Part shown: positions 46,093 through 64,000 of the stretch, piece by piece | Layout of the letters: each line of letters starts with the position of its first letter | How positions within the stretch are numbered: the first letter of the stretch is position 1 | Assembly (NCBI GenBank): GCA_051294905.1 | Contig: CM119372.1 | Coordinates: forward strand, 2,418,001 to 2,482,000 | DNA from: Botryllus schlosseri | Lineage: Eukaryota | DNA: 64,000 nt | Reading direction: 5' to 3' | Made by a program: the position numbers and the translations under genes | The notes under the pieces: generated by a model | Database searches by the model: none | The model's input: the letters and a program-made list of their open reading frames with translations, nothing else | What the model was told of the DNA's origin: nothing

Positions 46093-46234
46093 ATGAACAA
46101 GAAAGCACGGCGTGTTATTATAGTAATAATTGTAGTCTTCACTGTGATCTCAGCGACTTTTATCAGCGGACTGATAATTCGTATTTATATGGAAAATACC
46201 AACGCCGGATCCTCACCCGAGTCTCCAAATCCAG
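46093..46234 (+). CDS. Gene B exon 1: basic cytoplasmic tail and transmembrane signal-anchor
   Basis: MNKKARR followed by VIIVIIVVFTVISATFISGLII. Donor CAG|GTATGC. Confidence 0.75.
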
Positions 46235-49200
46235 GTATGCATATCATGTCATTTTTTCCGACTCGACTCCAAGAAAACCGTTTATTTTTTTAGTCAACCT
46301 ACCAGCGATTGGTGTTCATTGTGTAAATTTCCAGCTAAATATCCTCAAATTCCATCGAAATGCAGTTTTCACGTTTAATATGACGTTTTCTTTATATTCA
46401 GTCGCCAAACTCTAAAAGCTATAAAAGAGAAGGATTTAAAAAAACAGGACATTTGGGCGTCCTCGTATAGGTCATTTTACATTTATTGAAAAAGAGGACA
46501 AAACTTCTTGAATAACTACATATGGTATCCCTACATGATGTGTTCAATATTTATTGGAGTACTGACGGCTAGGTTTTTATGTGCGGCTATGTACATTGTA
46601 CAATAAGACACAAGATGTTGATACAGTCGACTATGCTCAATTCGGACAGTTTTGTTCCATTCGCTTTTGGCAGAATTAGGCGAAGAAACCGCTTTGTCTG
46701 AGTTAAGCGTAAATAAAGTGTTCGCTTCAATGTCGCCCGTAAAGACACACATTCCTCACGACGCATTCAAAATACGGTACTGTTGCGTAATAACAGAATA
46801 CTGTGTTGTACTGCAGTGAGTATGACATATCGTATCAAACGCACATTAGTTAAATCTTCCGGTAAGTTGCATTGTACAGTAAACCATTCAACAAATAATG
46901 TATACTGTATTAATGTCTAACACTAGGCTTACCATATTTTGGAAATGCAAAAAGAGGACACTTTTTCAGAAATATCAGACATGCAAAACTGGAGAAGAAT
47001 TCTCAAAAACCGGTAAATTTTTCCCACTTCGTGATCGGTTGACTAAAAAAAAAAAAAAGGTCATCACTTTCGCTCACAGCTCAAAATAACGTTTTTCTCT
47101 CCACATTGCCAGGTGGATGACTAAAAAAAAAGGTCTTCTTTTCGCTCAGAGCTCAAATCACCGCTTTTCCCTCCGAAATACCCGCCGGAGCGTCACTTCT
47201 CGGCTAATTTGCGGCATATCGCTCGCAATTTGATCTAAATCTGACCTAAATTTTCAAAAAAGAGGACAAAATCTCAAAAAAGAGGACAAAAGGGCGTCCT
47301 CCGAGGACACTTTCAAAAAAGTCAAAAAAGAGGACAAATCCTCTTGAAAGAGGACGTATGGTAAGCCTATCTAACACACACATATGGGGTTCATATCATA
47401 CTTTTCGATTTCCCCACCAACGCAACTAACTGGCGAACTGTCAATGAAGCACCTTTACTTTTTTTGTCTTCGTTTACTTTAGTGAGCAATCTCACTTTCT
47501 CAGCTAAACTTTTTTGTACCAATCTGTTCTACAAGATATACGCAATTTTACTCAAGCGCGACAATAAATCTGCGGTACGGTCTTGCATGAATTAATTGTC
47601 GAGGTCAAGGTCAACTTTACCACTCAACTCCAAAATTACAGTTTTTCATTAACACTTTATGTTGGTTGACTAAAAAAATGTCGTCACTTTCGTTCGAACT
47701 ACGAATTTCGTATTTAGCACCATTTATGCCCATTTTCACTCGAATCTGTCCACTGTCTTAGCTTTAAAAGCTGTAAAGGAGGACGAATTGCCAAATGAGG
47801 ACATTTAGGCGTCCTCGGAGGAAATTTTCAAAAACCTGAAGAAGGAGTACGTATGATAACCATACCGGTGGCTATCTTGTGTTAAAACGAATAGAGTGCT
47901 GTTTGTTGTGTCATAACCAATGTTCCCTTTAAGCTGCACACGTGCGCAAATGCGTGGTGCTGACACGGTCTCTGCGCACAGAAAATCGAAGTTGCGCACA
48001 AAAAATCCGGAGTATTGACTTTTTCTTTAGTCGTTACGCACTGTTGTCCGAGGGTCTACGCAATGAGTTGGTGAGTGTGCGCAGACTTGTCAAAAATTAG
48101 AGGTAACATTGGTCATAACCTAACGAAAGGAATTACGAGCCTATGTTCGAAGTAATCAGCGAATTGTCCGAATTAATCGAGTCTTATTCATGTGCCATTT
48201 TTACTTTGGTTCCGATCCTGAGCATGTTGGCCGAATTAGTGGATGCCCAGGTTATCCAGCGTCCTAATAAAGCGGAGTACTTTTATATATTAGGGCGTTA
48301 CTATATCTACAGCGATGATTTGGATAATCTTCGGCAATATCATCGGCAAGCATTGCTTGCATCGACCGGTGTATCGACAGTGTACAATGTCTGCGCACTT
48401 AATATCATGGAAATAAGATATGCAAATATCAACGATAATGCAATGTATTCGAGAAACTTGAGGCTGCTCGGGAGTTGTATCGCGTAATTAAAAACTGGTA
48501 CCAGCATTGGCCGTAGGGTAGGCCGTAGGGTGATTAATAATAGCCCCATCTCTGTGAGAATTGCAAGTCGATTCTCTCGAAACGATATCACAAACAATTA
48601 CCGATAATTATTGGTGTTTGATACACATACCACATAATCGAAGAATTCCTTCGGAAATTAGAAGCACAGTCCATTTATCAGAATCAGCATTGCACAACGT
48701 TGGGTGTAGATGTGCAGTGTCAGCAGTCCTTGCAGTTCATCGTGATAGGAACTTGGAAAAATCGTTGGTGTATTTTTAGAGCAGCTTCATATTTTGAAAT
48801 TTATCGCATATCGAATTAGGTGATGTTAAAGTGTTGGCTCTTGCTGTACCTGCTTCTGCTGGTAATGCGAGTGAAAGTCAGTTGTTACTTGATTAGCAAT
48901 GAAGCAAAACAAATGCATAAATATCCTATCATATCGAAAGGTATATTTGTTTAACCAATATTTATAACCGTAGTTGCCAATTGAATGGCGTTGCATAATT
49001 TTTGTCTTAGGTATCCGCGACGAGGCAAGAAAGAACCGACCGATTTCAGATGATCAGAAACGAAATCCATCTTCGAGCAATCATAGTAAAATACCTTCCA
49101 TTTTGGAGGATCCAACGAATCACCAGGTATAGACTTGTTTAAGGTGCATGGTGGATTATGCGGACACAACCACACATACGTGAATGTAAAGCGGTTGTGC

Positions 49201-52200
49201 GTATTGTTAAATTGCCGAATAAGGAATCGTCAAAACGTTAACGCATAGCAGCAGTTAATTGATGTTGCTGATAGTGATGCATTACGAATTGCGTTTCACA
49301 TGTATTGACATGCGTCCCTGAACACTCTCAGTGCAAAGAGTGAGAATTCACACCCAAAAGGTGGTGCTCAAAACAGAACCTACCTCAGCATTCAGAAACC
49401 CCTTTCTCGGGCTGTCGATCGAATATGTCACCGGTATTGTGAGACTGGAGGTATTTCCTTATTAGTGTGTTTCAAATTCAGAACGGTTTGACCCAACCAT
49501 CATTATGAAATGGCGTTCACTTTCTCTGTATGTATATTCAATCACCAGCCTAGCTCTTTTGGTTACTTTGCGCAAGAGACAATCTTGATTGATTCATGGC
49601 ATATTAAACATTGTTATAAATCCTACATGGCTGCGTGGATAGATACCTTCCTAGACGTCTCCACGCCTCTTTTAGTTCATTGATATAGGCATTTATGTAT
49701 TTGTGCTTGTTCTAATTTGTCAAGCAAGGTTTGGATTACGATGTATGTGTGTTGATTTATACCGCGATATAACTGTGACGTATAGGAGGAGCTGTTTCGT
49801 GTACCACCTTCTGGCTGTGAGTACAGCCTCTTTATGCTGAGAGTCTGTTTCTATACTGTTGACGTATACATTTCAAAGGAATAAGGTTGAAATATTTACA
49901 CATTTAGAAAAACGACCAATCTTTGTCTACGGAGGAAATCGTCACTGCTTCATCAACGCATTCAACAAAGCTCTCTGATATAGCGCCCACTAACTCTAGA
50001 AATCTGGAAACCCATATCAGTACCGTAAAGAGTGCAACAACGATTTCAAATCGCGACCCGGCGCGTGCCGTATCCAGTAACACAACGACATCGTACCAAG
50101 GTCAAACGACTGTCACCAGTACTACTATCGCTCTTGGTCGCGATACGGGTACGTTGACCACCAGCTCTGAGATATTGGACCGTGGGATGGCGAACACCGT
50201 GACAACTACTTCAACTATTTCAAGCAACGACAATCAAATGACTGTAACGAGCACCACAACTTTATTCAACCGAGACGACGGTAGAACCTCAACGAACAAT
50301 TCGACGATGTCTAATCAAGGAGTAGCGAGCACAATCACTAGTACAACGACTGTGTACAGTCGTGATATGGCGAAGACTGTTACCACAAATGAAGTAACTT
50401 TTACTGATATGAACACGGCTGATGAAAACAGCGTTTCATCTGTGGTACACGAGACCAGTAGATCTGAATATGCGATCAGTTCGTCCACAGAACAATCAGA
50501 TATCGTGGAAATAGTCTCTACTGATGCAATTAAACAGGGAGACAGACTTGAGAGCGAGGTGACGACAATGCGTGAAATTACAAGGTCAGTAGAGCGAGCT
50601 AAATCGGGAGTAGCACCGACCTTGATTCGACTTTCCATATCGAGTCAAGGGAGGCGATACCTAAACATTCTCTGAATTTCCCTCCTGCGTATAGTGACGA
50701 TTATTAAAGCGTTCGCATCTCTAATATTCCCAATTTGAGCAACCGTTTTGCATTAATGGTCTACCAGAACACCAAAAGCCAAAGTCGACTTATACAACAA
50801 AGCCACAATTTAGCAAGGGGCTACTCAACTATTTTTAGCAATGATCCATCTACAAAAGGATAAAGGTCGCTTAAGAGACTCATGCAACTACGCCACAATT
50901 TAGCAACTGGCTACTTAACTACTTTTAGCAGCGATACATCCACAAAAGGGTAAAGTTCGCTTTGGTCCGTTATTACTTTCATGAACTAATTTACAATCAT
51001 ACAAATGCGGTACGGTATAACTAACGAAATCCCGTGGTCTCAGAAAAAGCAGTTAGCGAAACGTATTTGTAGTTCTGTTAGTCACGGTTAGTGGGAGAAT
51101 TGTTATTATTGGGACTTTGTCTTTGCAAATCAATGATAATGGATTTGGTTTTGTTAAAAAATCTATACTGAGACTGGCAAGGCCCGGATTCACCATTGAC
51201 AAGACCCTTTACACCGCCAGTCGAGTAGTCCTGAACTAGTATATATATATATATGTATTATGTATGTTGTACACAAAACTTTGGAATATAATTTATATCT
51301 GCCTATACACTTCACGGAGGACAATCTACAGCAGTTGGTTCCCAAACGATGGGGAATTCCCCACTGGTGGGGAATTTTGGGATTTCTGGTGGGGAATAGA
51401 CCCATTAAAAAAAATCTCTACAGTAGTATCCTCCTTCATTAAATGTCGTTTTGAAATGCCTACTGAGTATTTCGTAGCTCATTTGCAATTCGGCGATTCA
51501 TATTATCAGTGCCTCCAATTAGCGAGAATCGCTAGGATAGCGACACGCAATCTCCAGCAATTTTTTTATTCATTGGTACACCATCATCGGTCACGAATCG
51601 TAGTGATAGAATAATTCTGATTCGTTGTAATAAGAGCTCATATTGCTGAACATGTATTCAAGGGAGATCGTGGACTCGCTAATTGACAGCACATCCGGAC
51701 TCGTTACAAATGAAATTAGCCTACATTTTTATGTTCTTTCAAGTTCCTTTATAGTATTGTGCGAAAGTGTAGTTGACGGCGGCTTATATATATATCGCAC
51801 GCATGAGTTCGTCAACATCAGGAAGTTTATCCGACCCATGTATTATTCGATATTCACGTATGTATATTGATGCTACCCCGCCTCATTTGGAAAATTTTCA
51901 AACCCCTCCTATTTTTCTGTTGGATGGGCGCCGGGGTAGATACATATATTTACGGAGGTACGTCTACGGTTACCAGTTCACCGCTGCGTTAATTTTATTG
52001 TGTGCTGATCAAATCCGGGGATCTTAACAATCACCAATAGCACGTACTATTTACTAAGCAAAGTCTTGCAAAATTTTATTGGAGGTAGCACTTTAAAGGG
52101 TGGATATGGATATAGAGATTTTAGGTGGGGAATGAAGGCTCGGAATAAATCGGAAGTGGGGAATTACGATAAAAAGGTTGGGAACCACTGATCTAAAGAA

Positions 52201-55200
52201 ATACAGACTTGAGCCTATCTCATACTCTCCAATGACATTGCTCTAGCAAAGTCGTCTCGCCCTCTAGTACCGCAATAACGAAGGATATTCCTGCAACAAA
52301 GCCCTCAGATTCAGCGACTTCAACCGATCCAGCGAAAAAGACAATGTCAGGTAAGAAACAAAGGAGCTAATACGTTGGAAAATATCGCGAATCTGCTCTA
52401 CAATTAACCGCTTTTTGCTTCAAATTTGTGTCTTGACGAGCTTCTCGTTTGATTCAGAACATCACGTATTTTTCGTCGACGGAGAGTTCACTTGTGACCA
52501 AGCGCATCGAGCGTGTGGTTCGAAGAAAGCGCTCGTGGCCACTAAGAGAGATCTGGACGAAGCATGGGAAGCTGGGTTCAGCAGGTGTGATCCTGTATAT
52601 AAGTTACATATATTTATATACTGTTATTATGAGACAGTCAAGTATAGTTTATGAAGCATACTCCTAACAGCATATCTCACGGCTCGATTCACCGCATCTG
52701 CCTGTGAGCTGTGATATTTAGTTGATGAATGATATTTGATAAATGATACTAATTTCATGACATTGACAAATATATTTACAATCAAGGCACAGCAGATGAT
52801 TGTAGTTATATAATTAGACTAACTAGAGCAGGGGTGGGCAAACTACGGCCCGCGGGCCGCATGCGGCCCGCAACACCGTTCTGTGCGGCCCGCGAGAGTC
52901 TAAAGAAACTTTTTAAAAATATTGATAAAATGCGTACTAAAAATCGAAATGTTGCAGGGACTTGATTAAACTTATTCTTAGTATATTTCACCGTGATAAT
53001 TCAGTGGTTCTCAAACTGGGGGCACCCCCTTGGGGGCGTGAAAGTATCTGAAGGGGGCGTGAAGCTAAGCTAAACTGAAAAATTTTTCGCGCTATGCGCG
53101 ATTTACATCCAATTCATAGTCATTGCTCTGTATTTAGTATGAATTTCACATTTTAAAATCCCTCATGCACAGTCGTAACCTTCCATGTCATCAAACTATC
53201 CAATCCATTAGGTTTGCTATAGCATCCTGGTTGCGTTTTGTGATATGACGATGAGGGGTGCGCTAAATCTTTCACCATCATAAGGGGGGGGGGGGGGGTG
53301 TCTTAAAAAGTTTGAGAACCACTGTTCTAAGGTTAATACTTCCTATATTATTTTTTATGTTTAATTTTGCTGCGCGACAGCCTGATCTCAAGGCCCACAC
53401 AGTTTAAAAGGTTTCAACTGCTAAACATCACAGAAATCCTAAACGAGATTGACATAATTCGGATCGTGAGTGAGATTTCAGATTGGCTACTCCTGTTTTA
53501 ATTATTTCAGGGATGTGCTTATGAAAACGATTCGCTCGAGTCTTAGAGGTGGATTCGTTCTGTGTATGCGTATAATTGGGGTATTATTATTTTATCTATA
53601 CCTGCGTGTTTGAAGCAAACATGGTTATGATGCTGTCAGCATTGTGTGTCCTGGAACTTAGGCAAAAGTGGAATCAGTAAATCTATGAACAGATCGCTGC
53701 TCACAGATTTAAATTTTAATCCTGTTCTAAGAATCGGGATAACCGACTTTCATCTCTATAGTTTTGACAAATTGGGTATTGAGGTCGGCCAACGTATGAA
53801 ATCTCGCGACTATGTTTCTGACGCGTGTACGATATCACCAAAGCAATGTTTGGTTTGTTTTAAATAAGCACATATACTATCTCCATGTCCTCACTATATA
53901 TTCAAATACCAATATTGCGATTTGGTTTATAATCCCAATTTTATATTGTGCGGCCCGCGAATGGATTTAAATGTTGAATGCGGCCCGCGAGCTCAAAAGT
54001 TTGCCCACCCCTGAACTAGAGCTAAATGCCGACAATGTAATTCTAAATATTTCTCTGCTTTAATCTAATAAATTGAAATCTGATTTCTTGTTTCCTGAAA
54101 ATGTAACTGTAGCTATAGCTATGCAATGCATACTTCATAGTTTATAGTGCGAAACGAGCTAAGCTAGGTTTACAGACATTTGCCACTATCACGCGTATGA
54201 GGTTAAACTATGATTTGATATGAACTGAACTCGATTTTTGTTGTATTTCCTCCGATTCAAAATTTAATTCACTTTCCAAGTACTTTTCTAATTCAGCGAC
54301 TCTAATTCTAATCTAATTTGTAAAAGCCGAGAATATTTTGGCAGAATAACTCTGGACATCGAAACTCCAGAGAACGTCAATTGATTTATGTTCCACTTCC
54401 AGATGCACGTACGGTTGGCTTCACGACAAGCACGTTGCTATGGTAACACAATCCCCAAACGAACGATGCCACAAGACAGACGTTGGTGTGCTTTATAGCG
54501 AATCACCTCAGAATTGCGAAGACAAATTCCAAGGGGTTTATTGTATCAACGGTAGGTGTAAACTTCGGCGATGAGTCGATTAGTTTTGTTTATTGATTCG
54601 CGACACGATACCAGGAACGGCAGACCTGCTTCATGCGCAAGTCGCTCATCAAAAATCTTAGTTTTGGAAGAGCGATAATAAATTGTAGGCTATCGAATGA
54701 AGTATATTTTTGTATGGTAATACCATAGTGTCCTGTATGGTGTGGACACAAGAAAATCTCACGGCTCTGTGAAACTGGTCTTCGTCACACTTTCCATTTG
54801 GTCAAAGGCAATTTGACGGTAATTTTTGACCGGCTCGCCGAGCGTTAAATGTGATGAAACGGGTATCAATCGAAAGCTACCGCGGTACTGATTGCGCAAA
54901 TATAAATTTCATTCTGCTCGTGGTCCTGGAACCCCCTAAAATCAGCTTCGAATCTTGCCGACGATTACCGCTGACGAGTGTCAGCCTAAAATCTTAGGGT
55001 CTATTTCAATTATTGAAGTGTATAGCGACTCGTTGATAAATCTCACTGCAGTAAGTACATTCGCTCAAGATAAGCAATGGATTTTTTTTTTCATGTAGGA
55101 GCTATCGACATACTATCGAAAGATGACAAGCTCTCTATCGGCACGGGCATGAAGAGTATCAACTGGTGGGTAACCGTCCACCAACAAGACGCATACGATC

Positions 55201-58200
55201 TCCAATATATACTGACAAGCGTCTCGACTGCTCATGCAAACGGAGGCCGGTCATACCCGTTACTGAAATATCTCCATTCTATCTACATATGTTGCAACGC
55301 TTTCAACATAACACATACCGCCGAGTTGAAACCAAGAACTTATGTCCAGGAACGACAGTAAGTGAACATTAGCCTCTGAATTCGAAGCAATCGTAGGCAT
55401 GAGACAGTTGCCCTTTAAAGTGGTCCCCGCTTTCTATGTAACGAATGTAGCAGGGGTTGACCATCGCGGCAGAGGTGATAAACAGGGTTGTGCAACCAAC
55501 AAGTCTACTCTCAAAGGATTCGGTGTCCTAAACATACAAGATTTGAGTCAACTAGAAATTGCCAATCTCATAGTGATTTGGAAATGATCAGATATTAACA
55601 GTCTATTCACAGCACTTACTCCAGAGGTTATATATTCAGACTACTTCCACTTCTACTTGCACAGGTTTCGGGCAAACCTTCTTGCTTTTTACAGTTTCAA
55701 TTTCGACAATCACCTGTCTACTTATTTAGGGTTACCGTCCGTCCTCTTTTAGGAGGATTTGTCCTCCCTGTTGAAGAAATGTCCACAATTCGTCCAAATG
55801 TTATCCTTTTTGGCAATTTGTCTTCCGTTTTAGCGTAAAATGCCCGAAAAGACCACGAAAGGCGTTCACTTTTGGCATAAAAGATAGACGACGGATTACG
55901 CGGGAGTCAAATCGGAAAAGGACTTTTTGTAATAAGCCAACGAAATTGAACCTACAGATCTGATTACTTGTCACACTGCACACTATTTACTTCCTCTTGA
56001 AGCAGTTTTGGACCGTCTTGGAAATTAGACTAATATGCCAATACCAACCCCTTATCTTCGCCTAGTCACAAAAACAAAAATCTGCCACAAAATTCACCTA
56101 ATACCTACATTACAATAGAATACTTGGTGCACAAGATGACCCGTGCCTCAACAACAGTGTTAAAAAGAATAAAAGCAATAAAACATGATTTTCATACAAT
56201 CAGTAAGATTATACCAACTATTGGCTCAACAAACCCCGTTTAAGAACCCCTACCAAAACCGTTTTAACGATTAATTCGTACCACCAGGCGTCTGTATACA
56301 ACAACTGCATGCTTTTAGTCCAAGGAAATTCTTCGAAGCATCCGTGAATCTATATCGTCAGATTTTCGGCTCCACCAAAGTCCTGACGCACGTCTATTGC
56401 AGTTACGAAGCTATGATGGTTTACGGAGCGGCAACAACTAACAGGTCTCATATTATTAGTAACATATTTAGCATTTAGGCGTATTTAATCAAAGCCACAT
56501 CACATTATTAAAGTGAAGACACTCTCGGAAGTACAAAAATCCAAACATTTTCGCCTGACTCTCGTCAAGGATACTCGTCAGCAAGTAATATAGAACTGAA
56601 AAGAACATTGCGTATCATATTTGTTGATGCGATCGCTGGGTGTCCGGTCCATACCGAGAAAACCATTACCGAGAATGTCATTACCACCGAGAATGAACAC
56701 AACCGAGAATGAAAATTAACGAGAATGCAATGTATGCAATGCAGACATGTTTCGTATGTGTACGGATCGTGTGTATGTGTTTCACCGGGTGGCCTCATTA
56801 TGTGTCGATGCTCAGGTATAAGTTTCTCGGCCACGCCCGTCTCAGTAATTAGATCTTCGGCATTGGCCATTATCGGTAACGTCCATTCTCGATAATGGTT
56901 TTCTCGGTATTGATATAGAACCCTATTGCTGATATAGGCTACCATGTTATTTTACAATCCCTACTATATTTGCTAACGAGTACCCCTGACAAATGCCAGT
57001 GGAAAAATTCGACTTAATTTTAATGTGAATATATCATTTAATTATTAAAGTGCTCATTAAATTGGATTATTAATACCACTGGCTAAATTGCGTGGTACAG
57101 AGTAGTGCCGACAACGGTATGTGTTCGCTCATCTCCGTCTGAGCATGATTGCCGCATGTAAACTATAACGCAGCCAGTCGTTATTCTATTCACTATTGAC
57201 ACCCCTATTCAATATCATTCACTCCCATTGTCCGTGAAAAGTATCAACCGAGAGATATGAATGGAATATATAACATAATATGTAATCCCGTTAAGAAAGG
57301 CTGGTTATTGTTATGGACTTGTAATTGCTAGATAAAGCCGACGCCGTCTAATCAATTATTCGTGGGATATTACCAATCGTCGAATCACTTAGGGTAATCC
57401 TGGTTAGTATACAACCGAGGTGGGTGTCTGATTGAAAGACTATACTCCAAGTCGTTTCGGCATCGCCTATCTTTTCATTATATTGCAATGTTGTGGTGCA
57501 TTGATTTGACAAGAAAATTAATAAAATAACCATGATGATGACTAACTGCATGGTCTAAGCAAGTCACCAATGTGTCATACTTAATCGTTGATTACAGGGG
57601 CACTACGGTCGCCTCAAGTTAAAGTTGAAGGTGTGAGGATATTTCAGGGCTGTAACCAAGTCACAAGGCTCCGAGTCACAAGTCAATCGCACTTTTAGTT
57701 TTTACTCGAGTCTAGTCGAGTCATTTTCAATTCACCATCGAGTCAAGTCCGAGTCCAAGTCATCAAGCAGAGGTTCGAGTCCGAGTCATAGTATTATGAC
57801 TCCAGTCCGTGTCCAAGTCATGGTGTTGACTGCTCAATTTCCAGTTAAAGTCTTGCTAAACCAACTTTTAGAACTTTGTTTGGTGATATCAAATGGTTAG
57901 CATCTTAAGATGCTAATTTTCCTCACTTTCAGCAGTTTCTGACCGCATTTTCATGTACTAGTACCAATAGACGAAGCACTAATAGGGTGGTTACGTTACT
58001 ATTCTTCGAAATTACAATGGAATGTCGGTCTCGACCGTCTAAGTCTCGAGGCATATGACTTGGTTCGAGTCATGCGCAGACTCGAGTCCGAGTCGAGTCG
58101 AGTCATTTCCGTATTTTGATAAAATGACTCGAGTCAAGTCGAGCCATCAAAAATTCGTGACTCGAGTCGGACTGGAGTCGCGTCATGACTCGAGTCATTA

Positions 58201-61200
58201 CAACCTGGGATATCTATAAATTACGAACAGTCTTGGCAGCCGCCATTTCCTTTAGAAATCCACATATTGTAATTGTCGCTAACATATGTCCACGAGTGGC
58301 TACATTCAGCTTGAGCTACATCTCGCTCTTAACACCTTACTTCCTAACTTCTTTACTAAACTCTCCGGCACGCATTTGACTCAATGTTGCACTTCCTGCG
58401 GCTTAGTCCTATTAGGTTAAGAATAAGTATAGGTATTCCGGTAGAAGCCCGCGACTTCTCTTAAGTTTTGTAGTTTCGGGGAAGCTGATTCGTTAATCGA
58501 CGGAAGTTGAATTAGTGATAATGCAGAAAACAGCCACCTATACACCAGGGATCGGCAACCTTTTTTGCTCTGGGGACAGGCTTGCGGATACAAAAATGTT
58601 AAACATTGAAAATTAATTGTAATTCATACAATAAGGTTACTATAATATGCCAGTAGTAATACACAATTACAAATGCTCCGGGAGTAACTTATCATCAATC
58701 ATAACCACTTAATTCTGAGCAGTCACTTTACGTGAAAAAAGTATAGGAATATTTCGCGTACCAGCATAATGGGATTAATACCTTCTATTCGGTAACAGCT
58801 TGTAAGTCTTCATTGTCATCTCTTGCAGATCGGCCATCATCCGACAGATTGTAACTTCAGCCGTCGAAATCGGCCTCGACGGGCTGATTATCAACTACGA
58901 ACCGAAATTGAATTATTCGCGCGACCATGCAAACACGTACATTCAATTTCTGAACGATTTTAGCGACGCGGCCGAGAAACATGGTATTTCAATTGGCACT
59001 GTGATATCTTCGTGGGGCATTCTCAAGGTAAGTGAGCTCGGCAGTGGACAGTTTGCGCTTCGTTCAAAACTGTCCCAGCTACTGGAAGTCACAATTCTGA
59101 CGACGTTGCTCTTCTACTGAGAACATGGGATTTAAATCGTATATCATCGCTGCGCAGACGGCGCGCTCTTTGGGTTGAAATTATATTATTTCCATAATCG
59201 ATTTCTATTATGTTTTGCCTAGTTTAGGGCACGGCAAAATCGAGTAATTGCAAGTTAAATATCACATTGATGACGATTTGTTTTTGTCGACCATACCGTT
59301 GCAATTAGGTTTGCATTTAAAACAAACGATGTTTTAAAACACTTTGTTTAAAACATGTTTTAAACAGTGTTTTAAAGAAAGGCCTTTAAAAAAACAAATT
59401 GGCGTTTTCTTTGATTGTAAAATCATGCCCTAATTGTGTATATACTTTCCAAAAAACATGTTGTATTAGCCTACGGACAAATACCACCCGATATAGCCGA
59501 CTTATAAATAGTCGGTTCAACATTAATAGTACACATATTTCGTCAAAGGAGCTATAATTACCTTATATTCTCAATTGTCGATGTCAATCCACTATGACGT
59601 CACAATTGAATATTCGTAACGTCATGGCTTAAAAAAACAAAGAAAAAACAGTAAAAAACATGTTTTAAATTAGGGCCTTGTTTTAAACATGTTTATTTTA
59701 AATTGATTTTTGTTTTAAATGCAACGCTAAATTCACTGTATTTTGTGATGAGCTGAGAATCGATCACTAATTCACAGATATGTCAGTTCCACTAATGTGC
59801 GTAGATTTTACTGCATGTTTCGTATGATGCGATACAACCAGTTGAAGTTTAATGGCTTTAACCGTGGAAAAATGTGTCGCAGCTATGATTTTCGTTGATG
59901 CATCAACTCGTAGTGACCGGGAGTGCATTATTTCAGTATTAGCATGACTCATGCTCACACTGCTCGGCCCGAATCATTAGAATTTCAACTCGATTCGGAT
60001 TCTAGTACACGGATCATTGTGTCCAACCCTGCCAGGTACTGCATCGATAACACTTCTATTTTAGCACTACGACTTGTTCGCCAAAAGCAAGCTGGAAGTT
60101 TTCGGGTCAATGGGAAGCACATACTATGGCCGTGACGTGGATCGAAATAAAGACAGAGTTAACGAAATGCTTGAGGAATTTGACACTGATCGGTAGGGAT
60201 CTCGTCTCATCTTGTCTTATGTTAACCCAAACTGAGACCCGTAGCGAAAAATTGTTTGTCCCGCAAAGAAGCGCAAAGTTTGAATGACGTGCGGCCTGGG
60301 CCATTGGTGTTTGATTTAGCTTATGGTCCGGTAACGTTTGAACCAAGCACAAGTCGGGTAATAAAAGGCATACACCAGAATCCCTAAAATATGTTCATGT
60401 TACCTGCTACCATTGCACATGGCTATTTTTCACAATATATGTAACTGGAATTCTTTTTCTCGCTCGGCGTGATTTACCTCCAGCTCGTAATTATTGCTCC
60501 ATATATAGTTCGAATTTCATGTTTGAGAAATCTCTCGGCAGTAATAAACTTCCATGTGGTACCGATGGATCAAAAATTGCAAAATGCTCTCTGGCCGCCA
60601 AATTTCCATCCCAGAACAGCAAATCTTTTTCTGGCTCAACACTTTGAGCCATGTTCTTTCTACCGCGGATATGCATGTGTATCCGGCTTTTCCAAAAATA
60701 TCTATGGACGTTCAAAAGTATCATCGGATCCCACCCGGTGGATCCAAAGGCATACGACTCAAGACATACGCTCAAGAACTTGAATCTTCGAACTTTTCTT
60801 GCTGTGTTCAATAATCTAAGGCTACAGCAAGCCAAAGAAGAATGTTGGGTCTTTCCCTTCAACAAATAGATTTAATAATAACGAAAATGTTGGCATAAAA
60901 TGCCGTTTCGATTTAGTCTCAGACTTACGCTTTTGAGGGTACATACATACATAAAACATATTGCCCGTAAATCGACATTTTGACTACCAACGCAGCTCGT
61001 TATATAGCGATAAAATACCACGGGCGAATATGACATGCAGCCTCTCTATGTATAGGCGTGTTTTATTGCTGCATGACTAGTTAGTCTAACTATTTTTCCC
61101 GATTTCGATATGGCATTATATCGGTTCACACTCTATAAATTTTGGAATTGAATTGGAAAAGGATGACGTTATTCACAAATAACGGAATAGACAAAAACAC

Positions 61201-62258
61201 CATGATCAGCCGATTTAATACTGCTATAAACCACTTTACCAGTAGCTCTGACGAAGATATAAGTTGTCATGTTTCTATGCTCCTCCCTTTGTTTTAGTCG
61301 TGATAAGGCGTTGGCCTTGCATATTCGTTGCGAGGAATACGAGAGATTTAACTGTAAACGCGGACGTTGGCATTTAATTCATTGTTTTGAAATCACGATT
61401 CGGATGTCTCTTGAGAACGGGGCTTGGGCCCGTCGGGTCAGAATATGGTATACAAAGTTGCGACTAAATATATTTGAATTGCATTCTTCGTGTAACTATT
61501 ATATTAGCCATGTACCTTACATACAACGGTTTTGCGTTGGCGTTTTCGCCTCCTGGTTAATGTCATCGACTTGTTTCTAATGGCGCCTAATGTGAAACCG
61601 CAACACCGCTGTCGGATGGTTATTATGTGGCCTAGGAACATGTTCGACATTTGCTGTCTTGGGGGATCATTTACTGGAAATATTTTTATTTAAAATCTCA
61701 ACTTTTGTAAGAAATGTGCTGGATGGATAATAAAGGGATTTTTCACATTTGCTGAAAATTGCTTCGCGGGCTAGATTTACCGTCTGGCGTGACGGATGCG
61801 GCCCGCGGGTCGTATGTTTGACACCCCTGGATTATCATACGGCAATTTTCAAGTATTTTGGGTCCCAGTGCCTCATCGGCCCCACATTTTTCCTGCCAAG
61901 TTGAGTATTCCGAACAAGTAGGAGTACTTCGTTAATGACCACCACGGTCTCCAGTCCGTGACGCTGCGAGCATGTACCGACGCATTGGCGAAGATCAAAG
62001 ATTGCTATCACGTGGTCATTGCCACGTTTACCAGTCTGTTTAAATTGAACTTTCAGGTTGCAAGTCGGACTTGGATTAACGATGGCGCCGGCTGCAGGCA
62101 AGCTGCGGCGGGAATATTATTGGGACGAGACAAAATTGAAAGATTTCGTCACGTGGTTACGCGACCGCGGCATAAAGCATCTCCACATCTACCCGGAAAG
62201 GTGGCGGCGTCACAGATACGCGGAGCAATATTTTGTAGACACTTTAGCAATGTTTTAG
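46093..62258 (+). CDS. Gene B: type II membrane protein, signal-anchor + mucin stalk + Link module + GH18-like TIM barrel (742 aa model)
   Basis: 11 GT-AG exons in continuous phase: 46093-46234, 49011-49126, 49908-50584, 52247-52350, 52458-52584, 54403-54551, 55099-55357, 56319-56444, 58829-59027, 60065-60192, 62057-62258. Total 2229 nt from ATG to TAG. The join of exons 1-2 to the mucin exon is the least certain part. Confidence 0.8.
46924..47369. mobile_element. Young hAT-like MITE (TAGGCTTACCATA family)
   Basis: Perfect TIR TAGGCTTACCATA and perfect TSD TCTAACAC. Confidence 0.92.
49908..52350 (+). CDS. Gene B mucin-like S/T-rich stalk (exons 49908-50584 and 52247-52350)
   Basis: A 225-codon open exon very rich in Thr/Ser with loose repeats of TVTSTTT..NRD. 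The phase-2 junction joins KVVSPSSTAITK... Confidence 0.85.
51332..52190. mobile_element. hAT-like MITE (CAGTGGTTCCCAA termini)
   Basis: Ends CAGTTGGTTCCCAAAC ... GGTTGGGAACCACTG. TSD ATCTACAG / ATCTAAAG. GGGGAATT subterminal motifs. Confidence 0.85.
52458..54551 (+). CDS. Gene B Link (Xlink) module (exons 52458-52584 and 54403-54551)
   Basis: HVFFVDGEFTCDQAHRACGSKKALVATKRDLDEAWEAGFSR|CTYGWLHDKHVAMVTQSPNERCHKTDVGV...FQGVYC. Fits the Link pattern A..AC....A.LAT..L..A...GF..C.YGW......C....GV....YC. Confidence 0.88.
52829..54013. mobile_element. Complete composite hAT MITE with inner MITE at 53002-53324
   Basis: Perfect TIR CAGGGGTGGGCAAAC and perfect TSD AACTAGAG. Inner TIR CAGTGGTTCTCAAAC, followed by TTCTAAGG. 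Confidence 0.92.
55099..62258 (+). CDS. Gene B glycoside-hydrolase-like (GH18-type) domain, five exons
   Basis: ...SINWWV...IYICCNAF... | ...KVLTHVY... | SAIIRQIVTSAVEIGLDGLIINYEP...YIQFLNDFSDAAEKHGISIGTVISSWGILK | ...FGSMGSTYYG... | LQVGLG...WDETKLKDFVTWLRDRGIKHLHIY. The alternating beta/alpha pattern and the helix-then-LDGL..N.E motif resemble the GH18 DGxDxDxE strand. Confidence 0.7.
56638..56923. mobile_element. MITE with ACCGAGAATG subterminal repeats
   Basis: Inverted ends GGG...ATACCGAGAAAACCATT and AATGGTTTTCTCGGTAT...CCC. Several internal ACCGAGAATG copies. Confidence 0.7.
57645..58207. mobile_element. GACTCGAGTC-family MITE (copy 4)
   Basis: Ends CAGGGCTGTAA ... TTACAACCTG. TSD GGATATTT / GGATATCT. 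Colinear with 62-646. Confidence 0.9.
59306..59729. mobile_element. MITE of the TAGGGTTGCATTTAAAAC family
   Basis: Ends TAGGTTTGCATTTAAAACAAA ... TTTGTTTTAAATGCAACGCTA. Reverse complement of 32247-32676. TSD not evident. Confidence 0.85.
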
Positions 62259-64000
62259 ATATCCTTAATTGTTCGCTTCGGTTCGCGTGAGAATGCGTCC
62301 GACAAATAGTGCGGACGCATTTACAACAATATGGACCAGATTTGGACAACTGGATAGTACCATTCGTGTAGTGGGACCAATTGAAGTGAATTTTGATTAT
62401 GTAATGTTTCTATGGTACCATATTAATTCTATTCTAATTTCTGGCATTCCGAAAATGCTACAGGAGAACTGTGCAGTTCAAAGCAGGCCAAGCTTAGGAT
62501 ACAGCGTTGTGCCAATCTCATGCTTATGAGATCCAATTTTGATTTGCTATGAAGTGAACTTGGTTTTTGTTCTATTTCCCTAAATCCGTAATTTTATTCA
62601 CTTTACAAGTTTTTGTAATTCAGTAATATCTATTCCTAATCCGATTTGATGGAGCAGAAATCTTTCTAGTTGTTTGACTCTGCAGTCAGCATGCAACATT
62701 ATCTCCAACTGCCCCCGCGGACTCGCACGCGTCAATTACCTCGATTTTCCGGACTTTTCAGTGTGTATAGTGTGATTTTGAGCAATCATTTTCCTTCGGT
62801 AAATATCACTGTGGTATTTAAAGATATTTAGAGATACTTTACCAAATCTATATTAGATCATATTGATATTGATATGGGCTTCGTTCGAGATCATGTTATG
62901 TTTACGTACTGTCGTATCTAACAAGCTGAAAACACTCTTCGTATGTGTACTTCTTTGGTATTCACTGTGTTTTGACCGCATGGTCATTTACACCAGACAG
63001 ATGTACTTTATTATTATTACTGATCTGGCGACTTGGTACCGCGAACCACTTTCGTTCTGGGCTTGTTGTAAGACACTGCTTACGCGGAATGAATGCCTTG
63101 GAAGAGCTGGATCGGGGTTACCATATTTTTGTGGCTGAAATTCCGGACACTCTTTATCGCCTACTAAGGGGTTACAGAATGAGGTATGAACTCATTGTCA
63201 GTCAATATGACTTCACACCAGCATAGATTCGCCTATCGACTGTATACAGGAGTGGAACAGAGGTCCTGAAATGGGCCATCTCTAATGTCAGCTACGGTGA
63301 TTGCTAGGGTCAGCAACAGATTTCTTCGCGGACCGGATGAAATCGTCGTGGCTTCGATAGCCCTACTATACTGTTTTGTATAGTTATGTGTTGTAACCAG
63401 GATCGAAACAACATTTTTTTTCAGCCCACTCCCGCCCCCCAAAAACACTGATCTGAGGCCCACCATCGCCCATCGGGGAATCGATGCAACTTTTTGGGGC
63501 CTACTATATGCATCTGATTTCTATATGCATTTAGTTGTTTAATTATATGAATAGATTCTTTCCATAATATTGGTTCTTCCATATATTACTATAAAATGCA
63601 CCAGCAGGTTGCACATTCGGTGATTTCCAATCTCTTATGTTCCGCGGTCCAGCTCAAAGGTTGATTAAGCTGATTACTAAAAAAGTCAGCTTGTCCTGAC
63701 TTGTTCACTGCCTATTTTGAAAACTGATTAAGTTCAACATCTTCGCGATCCCAAAAATAAAGGCAAACGATCACCAGTTTTAGAACCACTGTCTCTGACT
63801 AAAGCACCGAAACGGCCCTAACTGATTCTAGGAATACACATATAACTGCGATTGCAAATATACTTATTTCAGTAAATGATAATTATTTTTTACTTTTGGT
63901 TGCATATTGGCGAGGTCAGGTCAGTGGTCTCCGCCAATATGTTACGCTAAATCGCGCGCATCCCGAAGAAAATTTCAAGCAATATAAATCTACTTAAAAA

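What the first reader, a model, noticed from the sequence alone, without database searches (positions are those of the whole stretch)
55099..62258. GH domain has an altered catalytic motif (DGLIINYE) and looks unlike animal chitinases: possible ancient horizontal acquisition
Seen: the motif at about 58878-58901 keeps the first Asp and the catalytic Glu of the GH18 DxxDxDxE pattern, but has Ile and Asn at the two middle Asp positions. The domain is compact and I see no chitinase insertion domain or chitin-binding CBM14. Established: the third Asp assists substrate distortion in GH18, and its replacement changes or lowers activity, as in chitinase-like lectins. Inference: blocks such as YICC, NYEP, SWGIL and SMGSTYYG recall small uncharacterised GH18-like proteins of protists and bacteria (my recollection, not a search result). 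Four internal introns imply long residence if the domain was transferred.
Basis: partly seen in the sequence, partly recalled or inferred. Interest (0 to 1): 0.7.

Follow-up and report, generated by a model that had tools for sequence, protein, structure and literature searches.

The report
Divergent GH18-like barrel fused to Link
The stretch encodes a real, transcribed, five-exon sugar-cleaving (GH18-type) domain at the end of a tunicate cell-surface protein; its relatives are otherwise found only in single-celled eukaryotes, and its origin, by gene transfer or by inheritance with many losses, stays open.

Summary
DGLIINYE is encoded at 58878-58901, inside a 303-residue C-terminal domain of five exons. 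Transcript contigs from two studies show three of its four introns spliced out.

The ortholog from the tunicate Styela clava (46% identical) folds as a compact (beta/alpha)8 barrel. Every top structural match is GH18, with no chitinase insertion domain, so GH18-like is right and GH85 is not.

The domain belongs to an unnamed eukaryotic family that has no Pfam model:
- Its motifs are G-x-x-x-D-Y-E-P, WGIL and M-x-x-T-Y.
- The family consists of about 100 stand-alone secreted proteins of protists and marine metagenomes.
- In tunicates (Styela, Ciona, this genome) it is fused to a Link module.

Asp sits two residues before the catalytic Glu in 101 of 104 family members, including Styela and Ciona. 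The Asn here is therefore a lineage-specific change, not a family trait.

Horizontal acquisition is neither shown nor refuted:
- The only named animal homologs are tunicate, and pattern scans found no bacterial, archaeal or viral relative.
- The Link-bearing proteins form one long-branched clade that is not nested in any protist group.
- Other animals could not be searched sensitively.

I put transfer at about 0.35. If it happened, the donor was a eukaryote and the event predates ascidian divergence, because intron positions are shared.

The parts
55099..55357 (+). GH-like domain exon 1. It starts 2 bases into a codon and ends with 2 bases of a split codon. It encodes the N-terminal strands, including ...INWWV... 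and ...SIYICCNAF...
   Evidence: AG acceptor, GTAAGT donor and continuous frame. Matches the family profile and the Styela ortholog.
56319..56444 (+). GH-like domain exon 2 (126 nt), missing from a simple ORF reading. It encodes ...VLTHVYCSYEAMMVYGAATTN.
   Evidence: Needed to keep the frame. A 995-nt transcript contig begins its match exactly at 56319 and is joined at 56444 to 58829.
58829..59027 (+). GH-like domain exon 3. It carries the catalytic-motif strand (DGLIINYE at 58878-58901), the following helix and the SSWGILK strand.
   Evidence: Spliced joints on both sides appear in three runs. Single copy in the genome.
60065..60192 (+). GH-like domain exon 4, encoding ...FGSMGSTYYG..., the family's M-x-x-T-Y block.
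   Evidence: Joints 59027>60065 and 60192>62057 in transcript contigs. Family alignment.
62057..62258 (+). GH-like domain exon 5 with the stop codon (62256-62258). It encodes the last two strand-helix units.
58893..58895 (+). Asn codon (AAC) at the position where 101 of 104 family members have Asp, two residues before the catalytic Glu.
   Evidence: No transcript contig differs here.
52458..52584 (+). Upstream exon of the same gene: first half of the Link (Xlink) module.
   Evidence: Pfam PF00193, E 4e-07 on the enclosing open frame. Splice sites read.
54403..54551 (+). Upstream exon of the same gene: second half of the Link module. Its last base completes the first codon of exon 55099.
   Evidence: Pfam PF00193, E 3e-09. 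The donor phase fits. The lengths fit the 513 nt of transcript contig lying upstream of 56319.
49908..50672 (+). Ser/Thr-rich open frame (255 codons): likely a mucin-like stalk exon of the same gene. Exact exon borders were not determined.
   Evidence: The Styela ortholog has the same order: membrane anchor, Ser/Thr-rich region, Link, barrel.
46093..46236 (+). Probable start codon followed by a basic stretch and a hydrophobic stretch of about 23 residues (type II signal anchor). The 3' border is approximate.
   Evidence: Read from the open frame. The Styela ortholog has an equivalent anchor. Not tested further.

Best explanation
The stretch encodes the C-terminal, extracellular catalytic-type domain of a single-copy tunicate cell-surface protein. 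The domain order is short cytoplasmic tail, membrane anchor, Ser/Thr-rich stalk, Link module, then this domain.

The domain is a compact (beta/alpha)8 barrel of the GH18 superfamily without an insertion domain. It belongs to an unnamed eukaryotic family with no Pfam model. Members of that family are otherwise stand-alone secreted proteins of about 300 residues in protists.

**Inferred mechanism.** The family works like GH18 enzymes. They are retaining endo- or exo-beta-N-acetylhexosaminidases that use substrate-assisted catalysis:
- The invariant Glu at the end of strand 4 is the acid/base.
- The residue two positions before it holds the substrate's acetamido group.
- The invariant Tyr of the M-x-x-T-Y block helps it.

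In tunicates the Link module would bring the barrel to a glycosaminoglycan or other GlcNAc/GalNAc-bearing polymer at the cell surface or in the tunic.

**This genome's copy.** The helper Asp is Asn, while the Glu and all but three of the family's other strongly conserved residues are kept. I expect a protein that still binds the sugar but hydrolyses it more slowly, or favours transfer over hydrolysis. That is what happens in GH18 Asp-to-Asn mutants, and GH85 enzymes use Asn naturally.

**Shown versus inferred.** Shown: the gene model, transcription, the fold of the ortholog, family membership, and the rarity of the Asn. Inferred: the substrate, the activity, the topology, and the role of the Link module.
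For: **Gene model and transcription**
- Five exons with canonical splice sites and an unbroken frame; three joints seen in transcript contigs.
- Single copy in the genome.

**Homology**
- The spliced domain matches Styela clava XP_039260619 over residues 11-303 at E 1e-90 and 46% identity. It matches Ciona intestinalis LOC100184569 at 33%.
- Both orthologs have Xlink upstream, as does this gene.
- It scores 236 bits against the family profile.

**Fold**
- The AlphaFold2 model of the Styela domain has pLDDT 91.7 and pTM 0.90, with eight strand-helix units.
- All 50 best Foldseek PDB matches are GH18.
- All 50 best VIA matches are GH18 or GH18-like, except Cwp19 at rank 48: Z 17-22, rmsd about 3 A over about 250 residues.
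- AlphaFold DB and ESM Atlas matches are GH18 as well.

**Motif**
- The family profile aligns its vdGlivDYEP with LDGVDIDYED of a solved GH18 chitinase, 6k7z, at E 0.0025.
- Among 104 family domains, Y149, E150, H159, W188, M208 and Y212 are invariant. This protein keeps them all.
- The position of N148 is Asp in 101 of 104.
- An allele in run X10 differs in exon 58829-59027 by 5 synonymous and 3 non-synonymous changes and leaves the motif untouched.
Against: - No activity or substrate is known for any member of the family.
- The Pfam GH18 model is not reached: none of the four exons scanned gave a GH18 hit, and Styela scores 24.4 bits against a cut-off of 29.6.
- The second Asp of the GH18 motif is hydrophobic in the whole family, and the first Asp is present in only 57 of 104 members.
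- The ascidian orthologs shown have Tyr where 95 of 104 members have Trp near the end of the barrel. Together with Asn148, this could mean loss of catalysis.
- The structure was predicted for the Styela ortholog, not for this protein.
- One bulk RNA-seq run gave no reads on the exons in the 6% sampled, so expression may be low or restricted.
Confidence: 0.6

Rival explanations
1. Ancient horizontal transfer. A stand-alone gene of this family moved from a microbial eukaryote (prey, symbiont or epibiont) into the tunicate stem lineage. There it gained introns and was fused by exon shuffling to a chordate Link module.
For: - The only named animal homologs are tunicates, Styela and Ciona.
- The stand-alone form is abundant and diverse in protists and marine eukaryote metagenomes. 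Examples are Cafeteria roenbergensis, Flectonema neradi, and MMETSP and EukProt transcripts.
- Vertical descent would need losses in most animal phyla and in fungi.
- Tunicates have accepted precedents, CesA and GH6, and eight further candidate groups (PMC13390645).
- All Link-bearing sequences form one clade with 100/99 support, so a single origin is enough.
Against: - The Link-bearing clade is not nested in any protist clade. In the unrooted tree it is simply one side of a 1.35-1.54 substitutions-per-site branch, and its nearest neighbour is another long branch.
- No donor lineage is identifiable.
- The exhaustive library search used only a 66-residue exon and did not list even Ciona. The word-indexed searches are insensitive. 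Absence from other animals is therefore not shown.
- The 2026 Ciona survey of transferred genes does not list this gene.
Confidence: 0.35
2. Vertical inheritance. The family is an old eukaryotic GH18 offshoot that tunicates, and perhaps other unsampled animals, kept and most animals lost. The fusion to Link is a tunicate or chordate invention.
For: - The family spans distant eukaryote groups: a stramenopile, a euglenozoan, high-GC picoeukaryotes and possibly Amoebozoa. That fits an old origin.
- The tunicate clade sits outside all sampled protist clades on its own long branch.
- Intron positions and phases are shared between this gene and an intron-bearing ortholog on metagenome contigs.
- The gene is fully domesticated, with no compositional oddity.
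Against: It requires many independent losses. No non-tunicate animal or holozoan homolog was named in any search here.
Confidence: 0.4
3. The domain in this species is a catalytically dead sugar-binding module, like a chitinase-like lectin. It acts with the Link module as a bivalent glycan receptor.
For: - Asn replaces the nearly invariant Asp.
- Tyr replaces the usually conserved Trp near the barrel's end in the ascidian clade.
- From established knowledge, GH18 Asp-to-Asn mutants lose most hydrolytic activity.
Against: - The catalytic Glu, which is the residue lost in classical chitinase-like lectins, is kept. So are Tyr149, His159, Trp188, Met208 and Tyr212.
- From established knowledge, GH85 enzymes are active with N-x-E.
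- The same Asp-to-Asn change arose independently in one of two neighbouring paralogs on contig L002. That suggests a tolerated functional variant rather than decay.
Confidence: 0.35
4. The domain is a GH85-type endo-beta-N-acetylglucosaminidase, as the N-x-E motif and the weak Pfam hit suggest.
For: - Exon 58829-59027 gives Pfam GH85 at E 0.043. A metagenome homolog gives E 6e-04.
- N-x-E is the GH85 signature (established knowledge).
Against: - Both hits are below the GH85 cut-off of 22.2 bits.
- The family consensus is D-Y-E, not N-x-E.
- No GH85 structure is among the 50 best matches of either structural search.
- The genome has true GH85 genes elsewhere, at E 2e-50.
Confidence: 0.03

Closest known systems
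Glycoside hydrolase family 18 (Pfam PF00704; chitinases, endo-beta-N-acetylglucosaminidases such as Endo H/F/S, spore cortex enzymes SleL/YdhD)
   Same: - Same (beta/alpha)8 barrel: Z 17-22, rmsd about 3 A over about 250 residues.
- A Glu at the end of strand 4, preceded at -2 by Asp in the family.
- A Met...Tyr block on strand 6.
- The compact form without the insertion domain resembles the bacterial and ENGase-type GH18 enzymes.
   Different: - Only 10-18% identity, and below the Pfam cut-off.
- The middle Asp of DxxDxDxE is hydrophobic in the whole family, and the first Asp is variable.
- The family has its own signature: YEP...Y...H, WGIL, CCN.
- This copy has Asn for the -2 Asp.
- No member has been assayed.
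Styela clava LOC120336905 (XP_039260619) and Ciona intestinalis LOC100184569, both annotated 'uncharacterized protein'
   Same: Orthologs, 46% and 33% identical over the domain. They have the same order of membrane anchor or N-terminal region, Ser/Thr-rich region, Link module and barrel.
   Different: Both keep D-Y-E where this protein has N-Y-E.
Ascidian Xlink protein studied by Yoneda et al. 2010 (J Mol Evol 71:51), as cited in PMC12383584
   Same: It is a tunicate protein with a Link module. That module is reported to bind heparin rather than hyaluronan, which would bear on which glycan this protein is brought to.
   Different: I could not read that paper, so I cannot say whether it is the Ciona ortholog of this gene or whether its C-terminal domain was noticed. 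This genome has a second Xlink locus without the barrel.
Chitinase-like lectins (YKL-40, IDGFs, SI-CLP/CHID1)
   Same: GH18-type barrels with altered catalytic motifs in animals. SI-CLP is among the structural matches (Z 19.4).
   Different: Those have lost the catalytic Glu or carry the insertion domain. This one keeps the Glu, lacks the insertion domain, and is not closer to them than to bacterial GH18.
GH85 endo-beta-N-acetylglucosaminidases
   Same: N-x-E at the catalytic strand, and the same clan-level chemistry (substrate-assisted).
   Different: Not the nearest fold or profile. The Asn here is secondary. True GH85 genes lie elsewhere in the genome.

Membership tests
GH18 (PF00704 / CAZy GH18) | (beta/alpha)8 barrel superposable on solved GH18 catalytic domains | tested here: met
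   Model of the Styela ortholog (46% identical, pLDDT 91.7). All top-50 Foldseek PDB hits are GH18, as are all top-50 VIA hits bar Cwp19 at rank 48 (Z 17-22). The test was on the ortholog, not on this protein itself.
GH18 (PF00704 / CAZy GH18) | Sequence passes the Pfam GH18 gathering score | tested here: not met
   None of the four exons scanned (the 126-nt exon was scanned only at a stricter limit) gives a GH18 hit at E up to 10. The Styela ortholog scores 24.4 bits against a cut-off of 29.6. The genome's own chitinase exons pass.
GH18 (PF00704 / CAZy GH18) | Catalytic Glu at the C-terminal end of strand 4 | tested here: met
   Glu150 (58899-58901) is invariant in 104 of 104 family domains. 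It lies two residues after strand 142-146 in the model. It aligns with the Glu of DIDYE in chitinase 6k7z.
GH18 (PF00704 / CAZy GH18) | Full DxxDxDxE motif, in particular Asp at -2 from the Glu | tested here: not met
   This protein has D-G-L-I-I-N-Y-E. The family has Asp at -2 in 101 of 104 but a hydrophobic residue at -4 throughout.
GH18 (PF00704 / CAZy GH18) | Strand-6 Met-x-Tyr(-Asp) block whose Tyr contacts the acetamido group | tested here: inconclusive
   M208 and Y212 (GSMGSTYYG) are invariant in the family. Their equivalence to the GH18 residues was not checked on coordinates.
GH18 (PF00704 / CAZy GH18) | Hydrolysis of beta-1,4-linked GlcNAc glycans with retention | not testable with these tools
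   No biochemical data exist for any family member.
   236 bits over profile positions 22-282. phmmer E values are 1e-90 to 1e-15 against members.
   All are present except D148 (Asn here). Three other columns that are at least 90% conserved also differ here: Ser at 58, Ala at 72 and Tyr at 280.
GH85 (PF03644) | Passes the Pfam GH85 gathering score and has a GH85-like fold | tested here: not met
   13.8 bits against a cut-off of 22.2. No GH85 chain is in the top 50. True GH85 genes are on another contig.
Chitinase-like lectins | Loss of the catalytic Glu | tested here: not met
   The Glu is present and invariant.
Horizontally acquired animal gene | Integrated in the host genome, not contamination | tested here: met
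   Four spliceosomal introns, the same transcript as the Link exons, and host-type base composition.
Horizontally acquired animal gene | Absent from other animal phyla and close outgroups | tested here: inconclusive
   Only tunicates are named among the hits. However, the exhaustive search used a 66-residue query and did not list even Ciona. No full-length profile search of animal genomes was possible.
Horizontally acquired animal gene | Nested within a donor clade in a rooted tree | tested here: not met
   The Link-bearing clade (100/99) is one side of a long branch in an unrooted tree, and no outgroup was available.

The most novel reading that the evidence does not exclude
The tunicate ancestor took up a gene of a so far unrecognised GH18-related enzyme family from a microbial eukaryote. 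It welded that gene to the chordate Link module. The result is a membrane-tethered enzyme that remodels a GlcNAc/GalNAc-bearing polymer of the tunic or cell coat. That would be a further tunicate-specific trait built on foreign DNA, alongside cellulose synthase. The family itself would merit its own CAZy (sub)family, with D/N-Y-E-P chemistry.
Probability: 0.3. Interest if true: 0.7.

Novelty: new variant of a known kind. Interest (0 to 1): 0.5.

Why it matters
- **An unmodelled family.** A whole family of GH18-type barrels has no Pfam model and no assayed member. It is common in marine protists and present in tunicates. It is a clean target for enzyme discovery.
- **The Link module.** In tunicates this barrel is joined to a Link module, the module whose origin is used to discuss how hyaluronan biology arose in chordates. 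If the Link protein of ascidians is really an enzyme, the ancestral role of Link may have been to deliver a glycosidase to a glycosaminoglycan rather than to act as a receptor.
- **The transfer question.** If settled in favour of transfer, it would add a eukaryote-to-animal case to the short tunicate list.
- **A natural experiment.** The Asp/Asn pair between this species and Styela, and between the two neighbouring paralogs on contig L002, tests the helper residue of substrate-assisted catalysis.

Tried and rejected
**Searches that gave nothing useful**
- The ESM Atlas with exon 55099-55357 alone gave no usable hit.
- phmmer of exon 58829-59027 against PDB sequences gave only chance matches to designed beta-trefoils.
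- Six library hits with many short repeated matches (P0004, P0012, P0013, P0017, P0029, P0032) are repeat proteins. They score poorly or not at all against the whole domain and were set aside.

**Pattern scans**
- With A2 and A3 it found no relative in bacterial and archaeal genomes or in IMG/VR viral contigs. These scans see only fairly close relatives, so this is weak evidence of absence.
- A giant-virus origin for the intron-less Link-barrel genes on contig L002 was considered. Tupanvirus Xlink proteins are mentioned in PMC12383584. The idea found no support in the viral scans.

**Other failures**
- The profile search of the 5.8-billion-protein collection with A1 was swamped by word-sharing candidates and scored only 4 true hits.
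- I tried to take a canonical chitinase open frame from this genome as an outgroup. The loci gave only short exon frames and no usable sequence, so the trees stay unrooted.
- Yoneda et al. 2010 and Kawashima et al. 2009 are not held in the library.
- A literature search for a described divergent protist GH18 family found nothing relevant.

The spliced 303-residue protein has no reference, so it was not sent to the remote fold, atlas or library tools. Single exons and the Styela ortholog stood in for it.

**Reading rejected**
GH85 membership was considered and rejected; see the rival explanations.

Full report
**1. What is in the sequence**

On the + strand, 55099-62258 holds five exons: 55099-55357, 56319-56444, 58829-59027, 60065-60192 and 62057-62258. 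All have AG acceptors and GT donors. The split codons fit, and the frame runs to a stop at 62256-62258, giving 303 residues.

A simple open-frame reading misses the 126-nt exon at 56319-56444. It is required for the frame.

Transcript contigs of three public runs from two studies were laid on 56300-62290.
- They show the joints 56444>58829, 59027>60065 and 60192>62057, each GT..AG.
- One 995-nt contig starts its match exactly at 56319 and has 513 more bases upstream.
- That length fits exon 55099-55357 plus the two Link exons.

The motif DGLIINYE is at 58878-58901, and its Asn codon is AAC at 58893-58895. No contig differs there. One allele (run X10) differs in that exon by five synonymous and three non-synonymous changes elsewhere.

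**2. The gene around it**

Upstream on the same strand lie:
- a start codon with a basic-then-hydrophobic signal anchor (from 46093);
- a 255-codon Ser/Thr-rich open frame (49908-50672);
- two exons that each match Pfam Xlink, at E 4e-07 and 3e-09, with borders 52458-52584 and 54403-54551.

The last base of 54551 completes the first codon of exon 55099. The domain under study is therefore the C-terminal end of a Link-module protein on a mucin-like stalk. With a type II anchor it would face outwards (inference).

The gene is single copy: exon 58829-59027 and the family profile hit only this locus in the 495-Mb assembly.

**3. Relatives**

An exhaustive phmmer search of 1.84 billion representative proteins with the 66-residue exon 58829-59027 gave 33 hits.

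*Tunicate orthologs*
- The best full-length hit is Styela clava XP_039260619 (639 aa, 'uncharacterized'). It has a membrane anchor, a Ser/Thr-rich region, Xlink, then this domain.
- My spliced domain matches it over residues 11-303 at E 1e-90 and 46% identity.
- Ciona intestinalis LOC100184569 (546 aa, Xlink) is 33% identical.
- The window is thus from a tunicate.

*Stand-alone proteins*
- The other real hits are proteins of about 270-320 residues with signal peptides and no other domain.
- A further search from one of them found 59 more.
- The few with names are from microbial eukaryotes: Cafeteria roenbergensis, Flectonema neradi (EukProt), and MMETSP and EukProt transcripts.
- Where neighbouring genes can be seen, they are eukaryotic: TB2/DP1/HVA22, CDC73 and RING fingers on compact, often very GC-rich contigs from Tara Oceans and similar samples.
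- None of these proteins has a Pfam domain on record.
- In a picoeukaryote the domain is fused to a GH113 domain.

*Prokaryotes and viruses*
- Pattern scans of 185,579 bacterial and archaeal genomes and of IMG/VR found no relative.
- These scans only see fairly close relatives.

**4. Which fold and family**

An AlphaFold2 model of the Styela domain, built on a 17-sequence family alignment, has mean pLDDT 91.7 and pTM 0.90. It shows eight strand-helix units with only a short loop where chitinases carry their insertion domain.

| Search | Result |
|---|---|
| Foldseek vs PDB | 50 best hits, all GH18 (chitinases, SleL, Endo H, chitinase-like proteins, narbonin) |
| VIA-align vs 48,161 chains (independent of Foldseek) | 50 best hits, all GH18 or GH18-like bar Cwp19; Z 17-22, rmsd about 3 A over about 250 residues, 8-18% identity |
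| AlphaFold DB clusters | GH18 matches |
| ESM Atlas | GH18 matches; compact bacterial GH18 (YdhD/SleL-like, EndoS/BT1044-like) are nearest |

At sequence level the link is faint but consistent.
- The family profile's best PDB hit is a GH18 chitinase (6k7z, E 0.0025). The family's vdGlivDYEP aligns on its LDGVDIDYED.
- Styela reaches 24.4 bits on Pfam GH18, under the 29.6 cut-off.
- The weak Pfam GH85 hits (E 0.043 for this exon) are also under their cut-off. No GH85 structure appears among the best structural matches.

The animal's ordinary GH18 chitinase genes form a tandem cluster on another contig, and its GH85 genes lie on a third. Both are recognised easily. The fold assignment 'GH18-like' therefore stands, 'unlike animal chitinases' stands, and GH85 is rejected.

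**5. The motif in context**

In an alignment of 104 family domains:
- The Glu is invariant, as are the preceding Tyr and His159, Trp188 (WGIL), Met208 and Tyr212 (M-x-x-T-Y). The following Pro is near-invariant (103 of 104).
- The residue two before the Glu is Asp in 101, Asn in 2 (this protein and the metagenome protein P0039) and Val in 1.
- The position of the second GH18 Asp is hydrophobic in all.
- The first Asp is kept in only 57.

Styela, Ciona, the intron-bearing metagenome ortholog and one of the two L002 paralogs all have D-Y-E. The family signature is therefore D-Y-E-P, a reduced GH18 motif. The Asn of this genome is a secondary, lineage-specific replacement. It also arose independently in a second lineage.

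This protein keeps 17 of the 21 columns that are at least 90% conserved. Besides the Asn it differs by Ser at 58, Ala at 72, and a Tyr in place of the usual Trp near the end of the barrel. That last change is also seen in Styela and Ciona.

**6. How it most likely works**

From the established chemistry of GH18, GH20, GH56, GH84 and GH85, the substrate's own acetamido group is the nucleophile. A Glu at the end of strand 4 is the acid/base, and a carboxylate or amide two residues before it polarises the acetamido group.

I infer that the family cleaves or transfers beta-linked N-acetylhexosamine glycans. In tunicates the Link module would tether the barrel to a glycosaminoglycan-like or chitin-like polymer. 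According to PMC12383584, which cites Yoneda et al. 2010, an ascidian Xlink domain binds heparin rather than hyaluronan. I could not read that paper.

With Asn for Asp, I expect reduced hydrolysis or a shift towards transfer, not a dead protein, because the Glu and the rest of the site are intact. A lectin-like role is the main rival. None of this has been tested.

**7. Horizontal transfer?**

*For transfer*
- The named animal homologs are all tunicates.
- The stand-alone form is widespread in protists.
- Tunicates have precedents (PMC13390645).

*Against, or missing*
- In maximum-likelihood trees (70 rows quick, 42 rows careful), all Link-bearing sequences form one clade with 100/99 support, on a stem of 1.35-1.54 substitutions per site.
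- Inside that clade, this protein pairs with Styela. Ciona and the metagenome ortholog join next, and three intron-less Link-barrel genes from marine samples are sister to them.
- The clade is not nested in any protist group. Its neighbour is a single long-branched stand-alone protein. I had no outgroup to root the tree.
- The one exhaustive search used a 66-residue query that did not list even Ciona. Absence from other animals is therefore not established.
- The 2026 survey of transferred genes in Ciona does not list this gene.

*What can be said*
- If there was a transfer, the donor was a eukaryote, not a bacterium.
- It was a single event.
- It predates the split of the ascidian lineages sampled.

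The timing rests on shared introns. The metagenome ortholog (L007-L009) has introns at the same positions, three of them in the same phases (after ...AAT-x-x-R, after WGILK, and before LQVGLG), plus one extra intron. Exon-length fragments from two further genomes also end right after WGILK.

I put transfer at about 0.35, vertical descent with losses at about 0.4, and leave the rest undecided.

**8. Novelty**

The fold and chemistry are of a known kind. What is new:
- the recognition of a sizeable GH18-related family without a Pfam model or an assayed member;
- its fusion to a Link module on a membrane-anchored mucin stalk in tunicates;
- the natural Asp/Asn variation at the helper position.

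Some protist members seem to carry the automatic name 'GH18 domain-containing protein' (by language-model similarity only, not verified by alignment). The GH18 kinship itself is therefore not wholly unnoticed. I rate the finding as a new variant of a known kind, of moderate interest.

Noticed in passing
window 57640-58195 (intron between exons 56444 and 58829): Repeat element rich in GAGTC/GACTC units, with inverted-repeat arms (for example 58065-58099 / 58159-58193). It is covered thousands-fold in RNA-type contigs of all runs. Shorter copies that skip 57697-58125 are common. It looks like a very abundant, transcribed MITE-like family.
   Followed up: partly
window 59300-59735 (intron between exons 59027 and 60065): A second element, bounded by about 40-nt imperfect inverted repeats rich in GTTTTAAA. 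It is also covered hundreds- to thousands-fold in the same runs. Probably another MITE.
   Followed up: partly
G000:C7:3568454-3579392: A second locus with Xlink-domain exons in this genome. The barrel profile does not hit there, so this Link gene seems to lack the GH18-like domain.
   Followed up: no
G000:C9:18731818-18775746 and G000:C11:17165361-17182635, 7116358-7118174: A tandem cluster of canonical GH18 chitinase exons (about four gene copies). On another contig there are several canonical GH85 endo-beta-N-acetylglucosaminidase genes, an apparent local expansion.
   Followed up: no
L002:92-1366 (+) and L002:1723-2955 (-): A 2.9-kb, 35% GC marine contig carries two convergent, intron-less genes. 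Each encodes a signal peptide, a Link module and this barrel. One has N-Y-E and the other D-Y-E. The source organism is unknown; the position as sister to ascidians would fit a pelagic tunicate with a compact genome such as an appendicularian, but this is a guess.
   Followed up: partly
L007, L008, L009 (for example L009:5998-10088): Three metagenome contigs from different samples carry the same intron-bearing ortholog (D-Y-E). It shares the window gene's intron positions, three of them in the same phases, and has one extra intron. This is probably host DNA of an ascidian in a host-associated metagenome.
   Followed up: partly
proteins P0022 and P0030 (metagenome, eukaryotic neighbours): In protists the same barrel occurs fused to a GH113 domain (P0022). 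It also occurs at the end of proteins of about 700 residues with an unexplained N-terminal half (P0030, with a weak YkuD-like hit).
   Followed up: no
window 58865-58993 and 56373-56411: Run X10 carries a divergent allele of the gene. In exon 58829-59027 it has 5 synonymous and 3 non-synonymous differences among 11 differing letters. Exon 56319-56444 has three more. This indicates high heterozygosity or strain divergence.
   Followed up: partly
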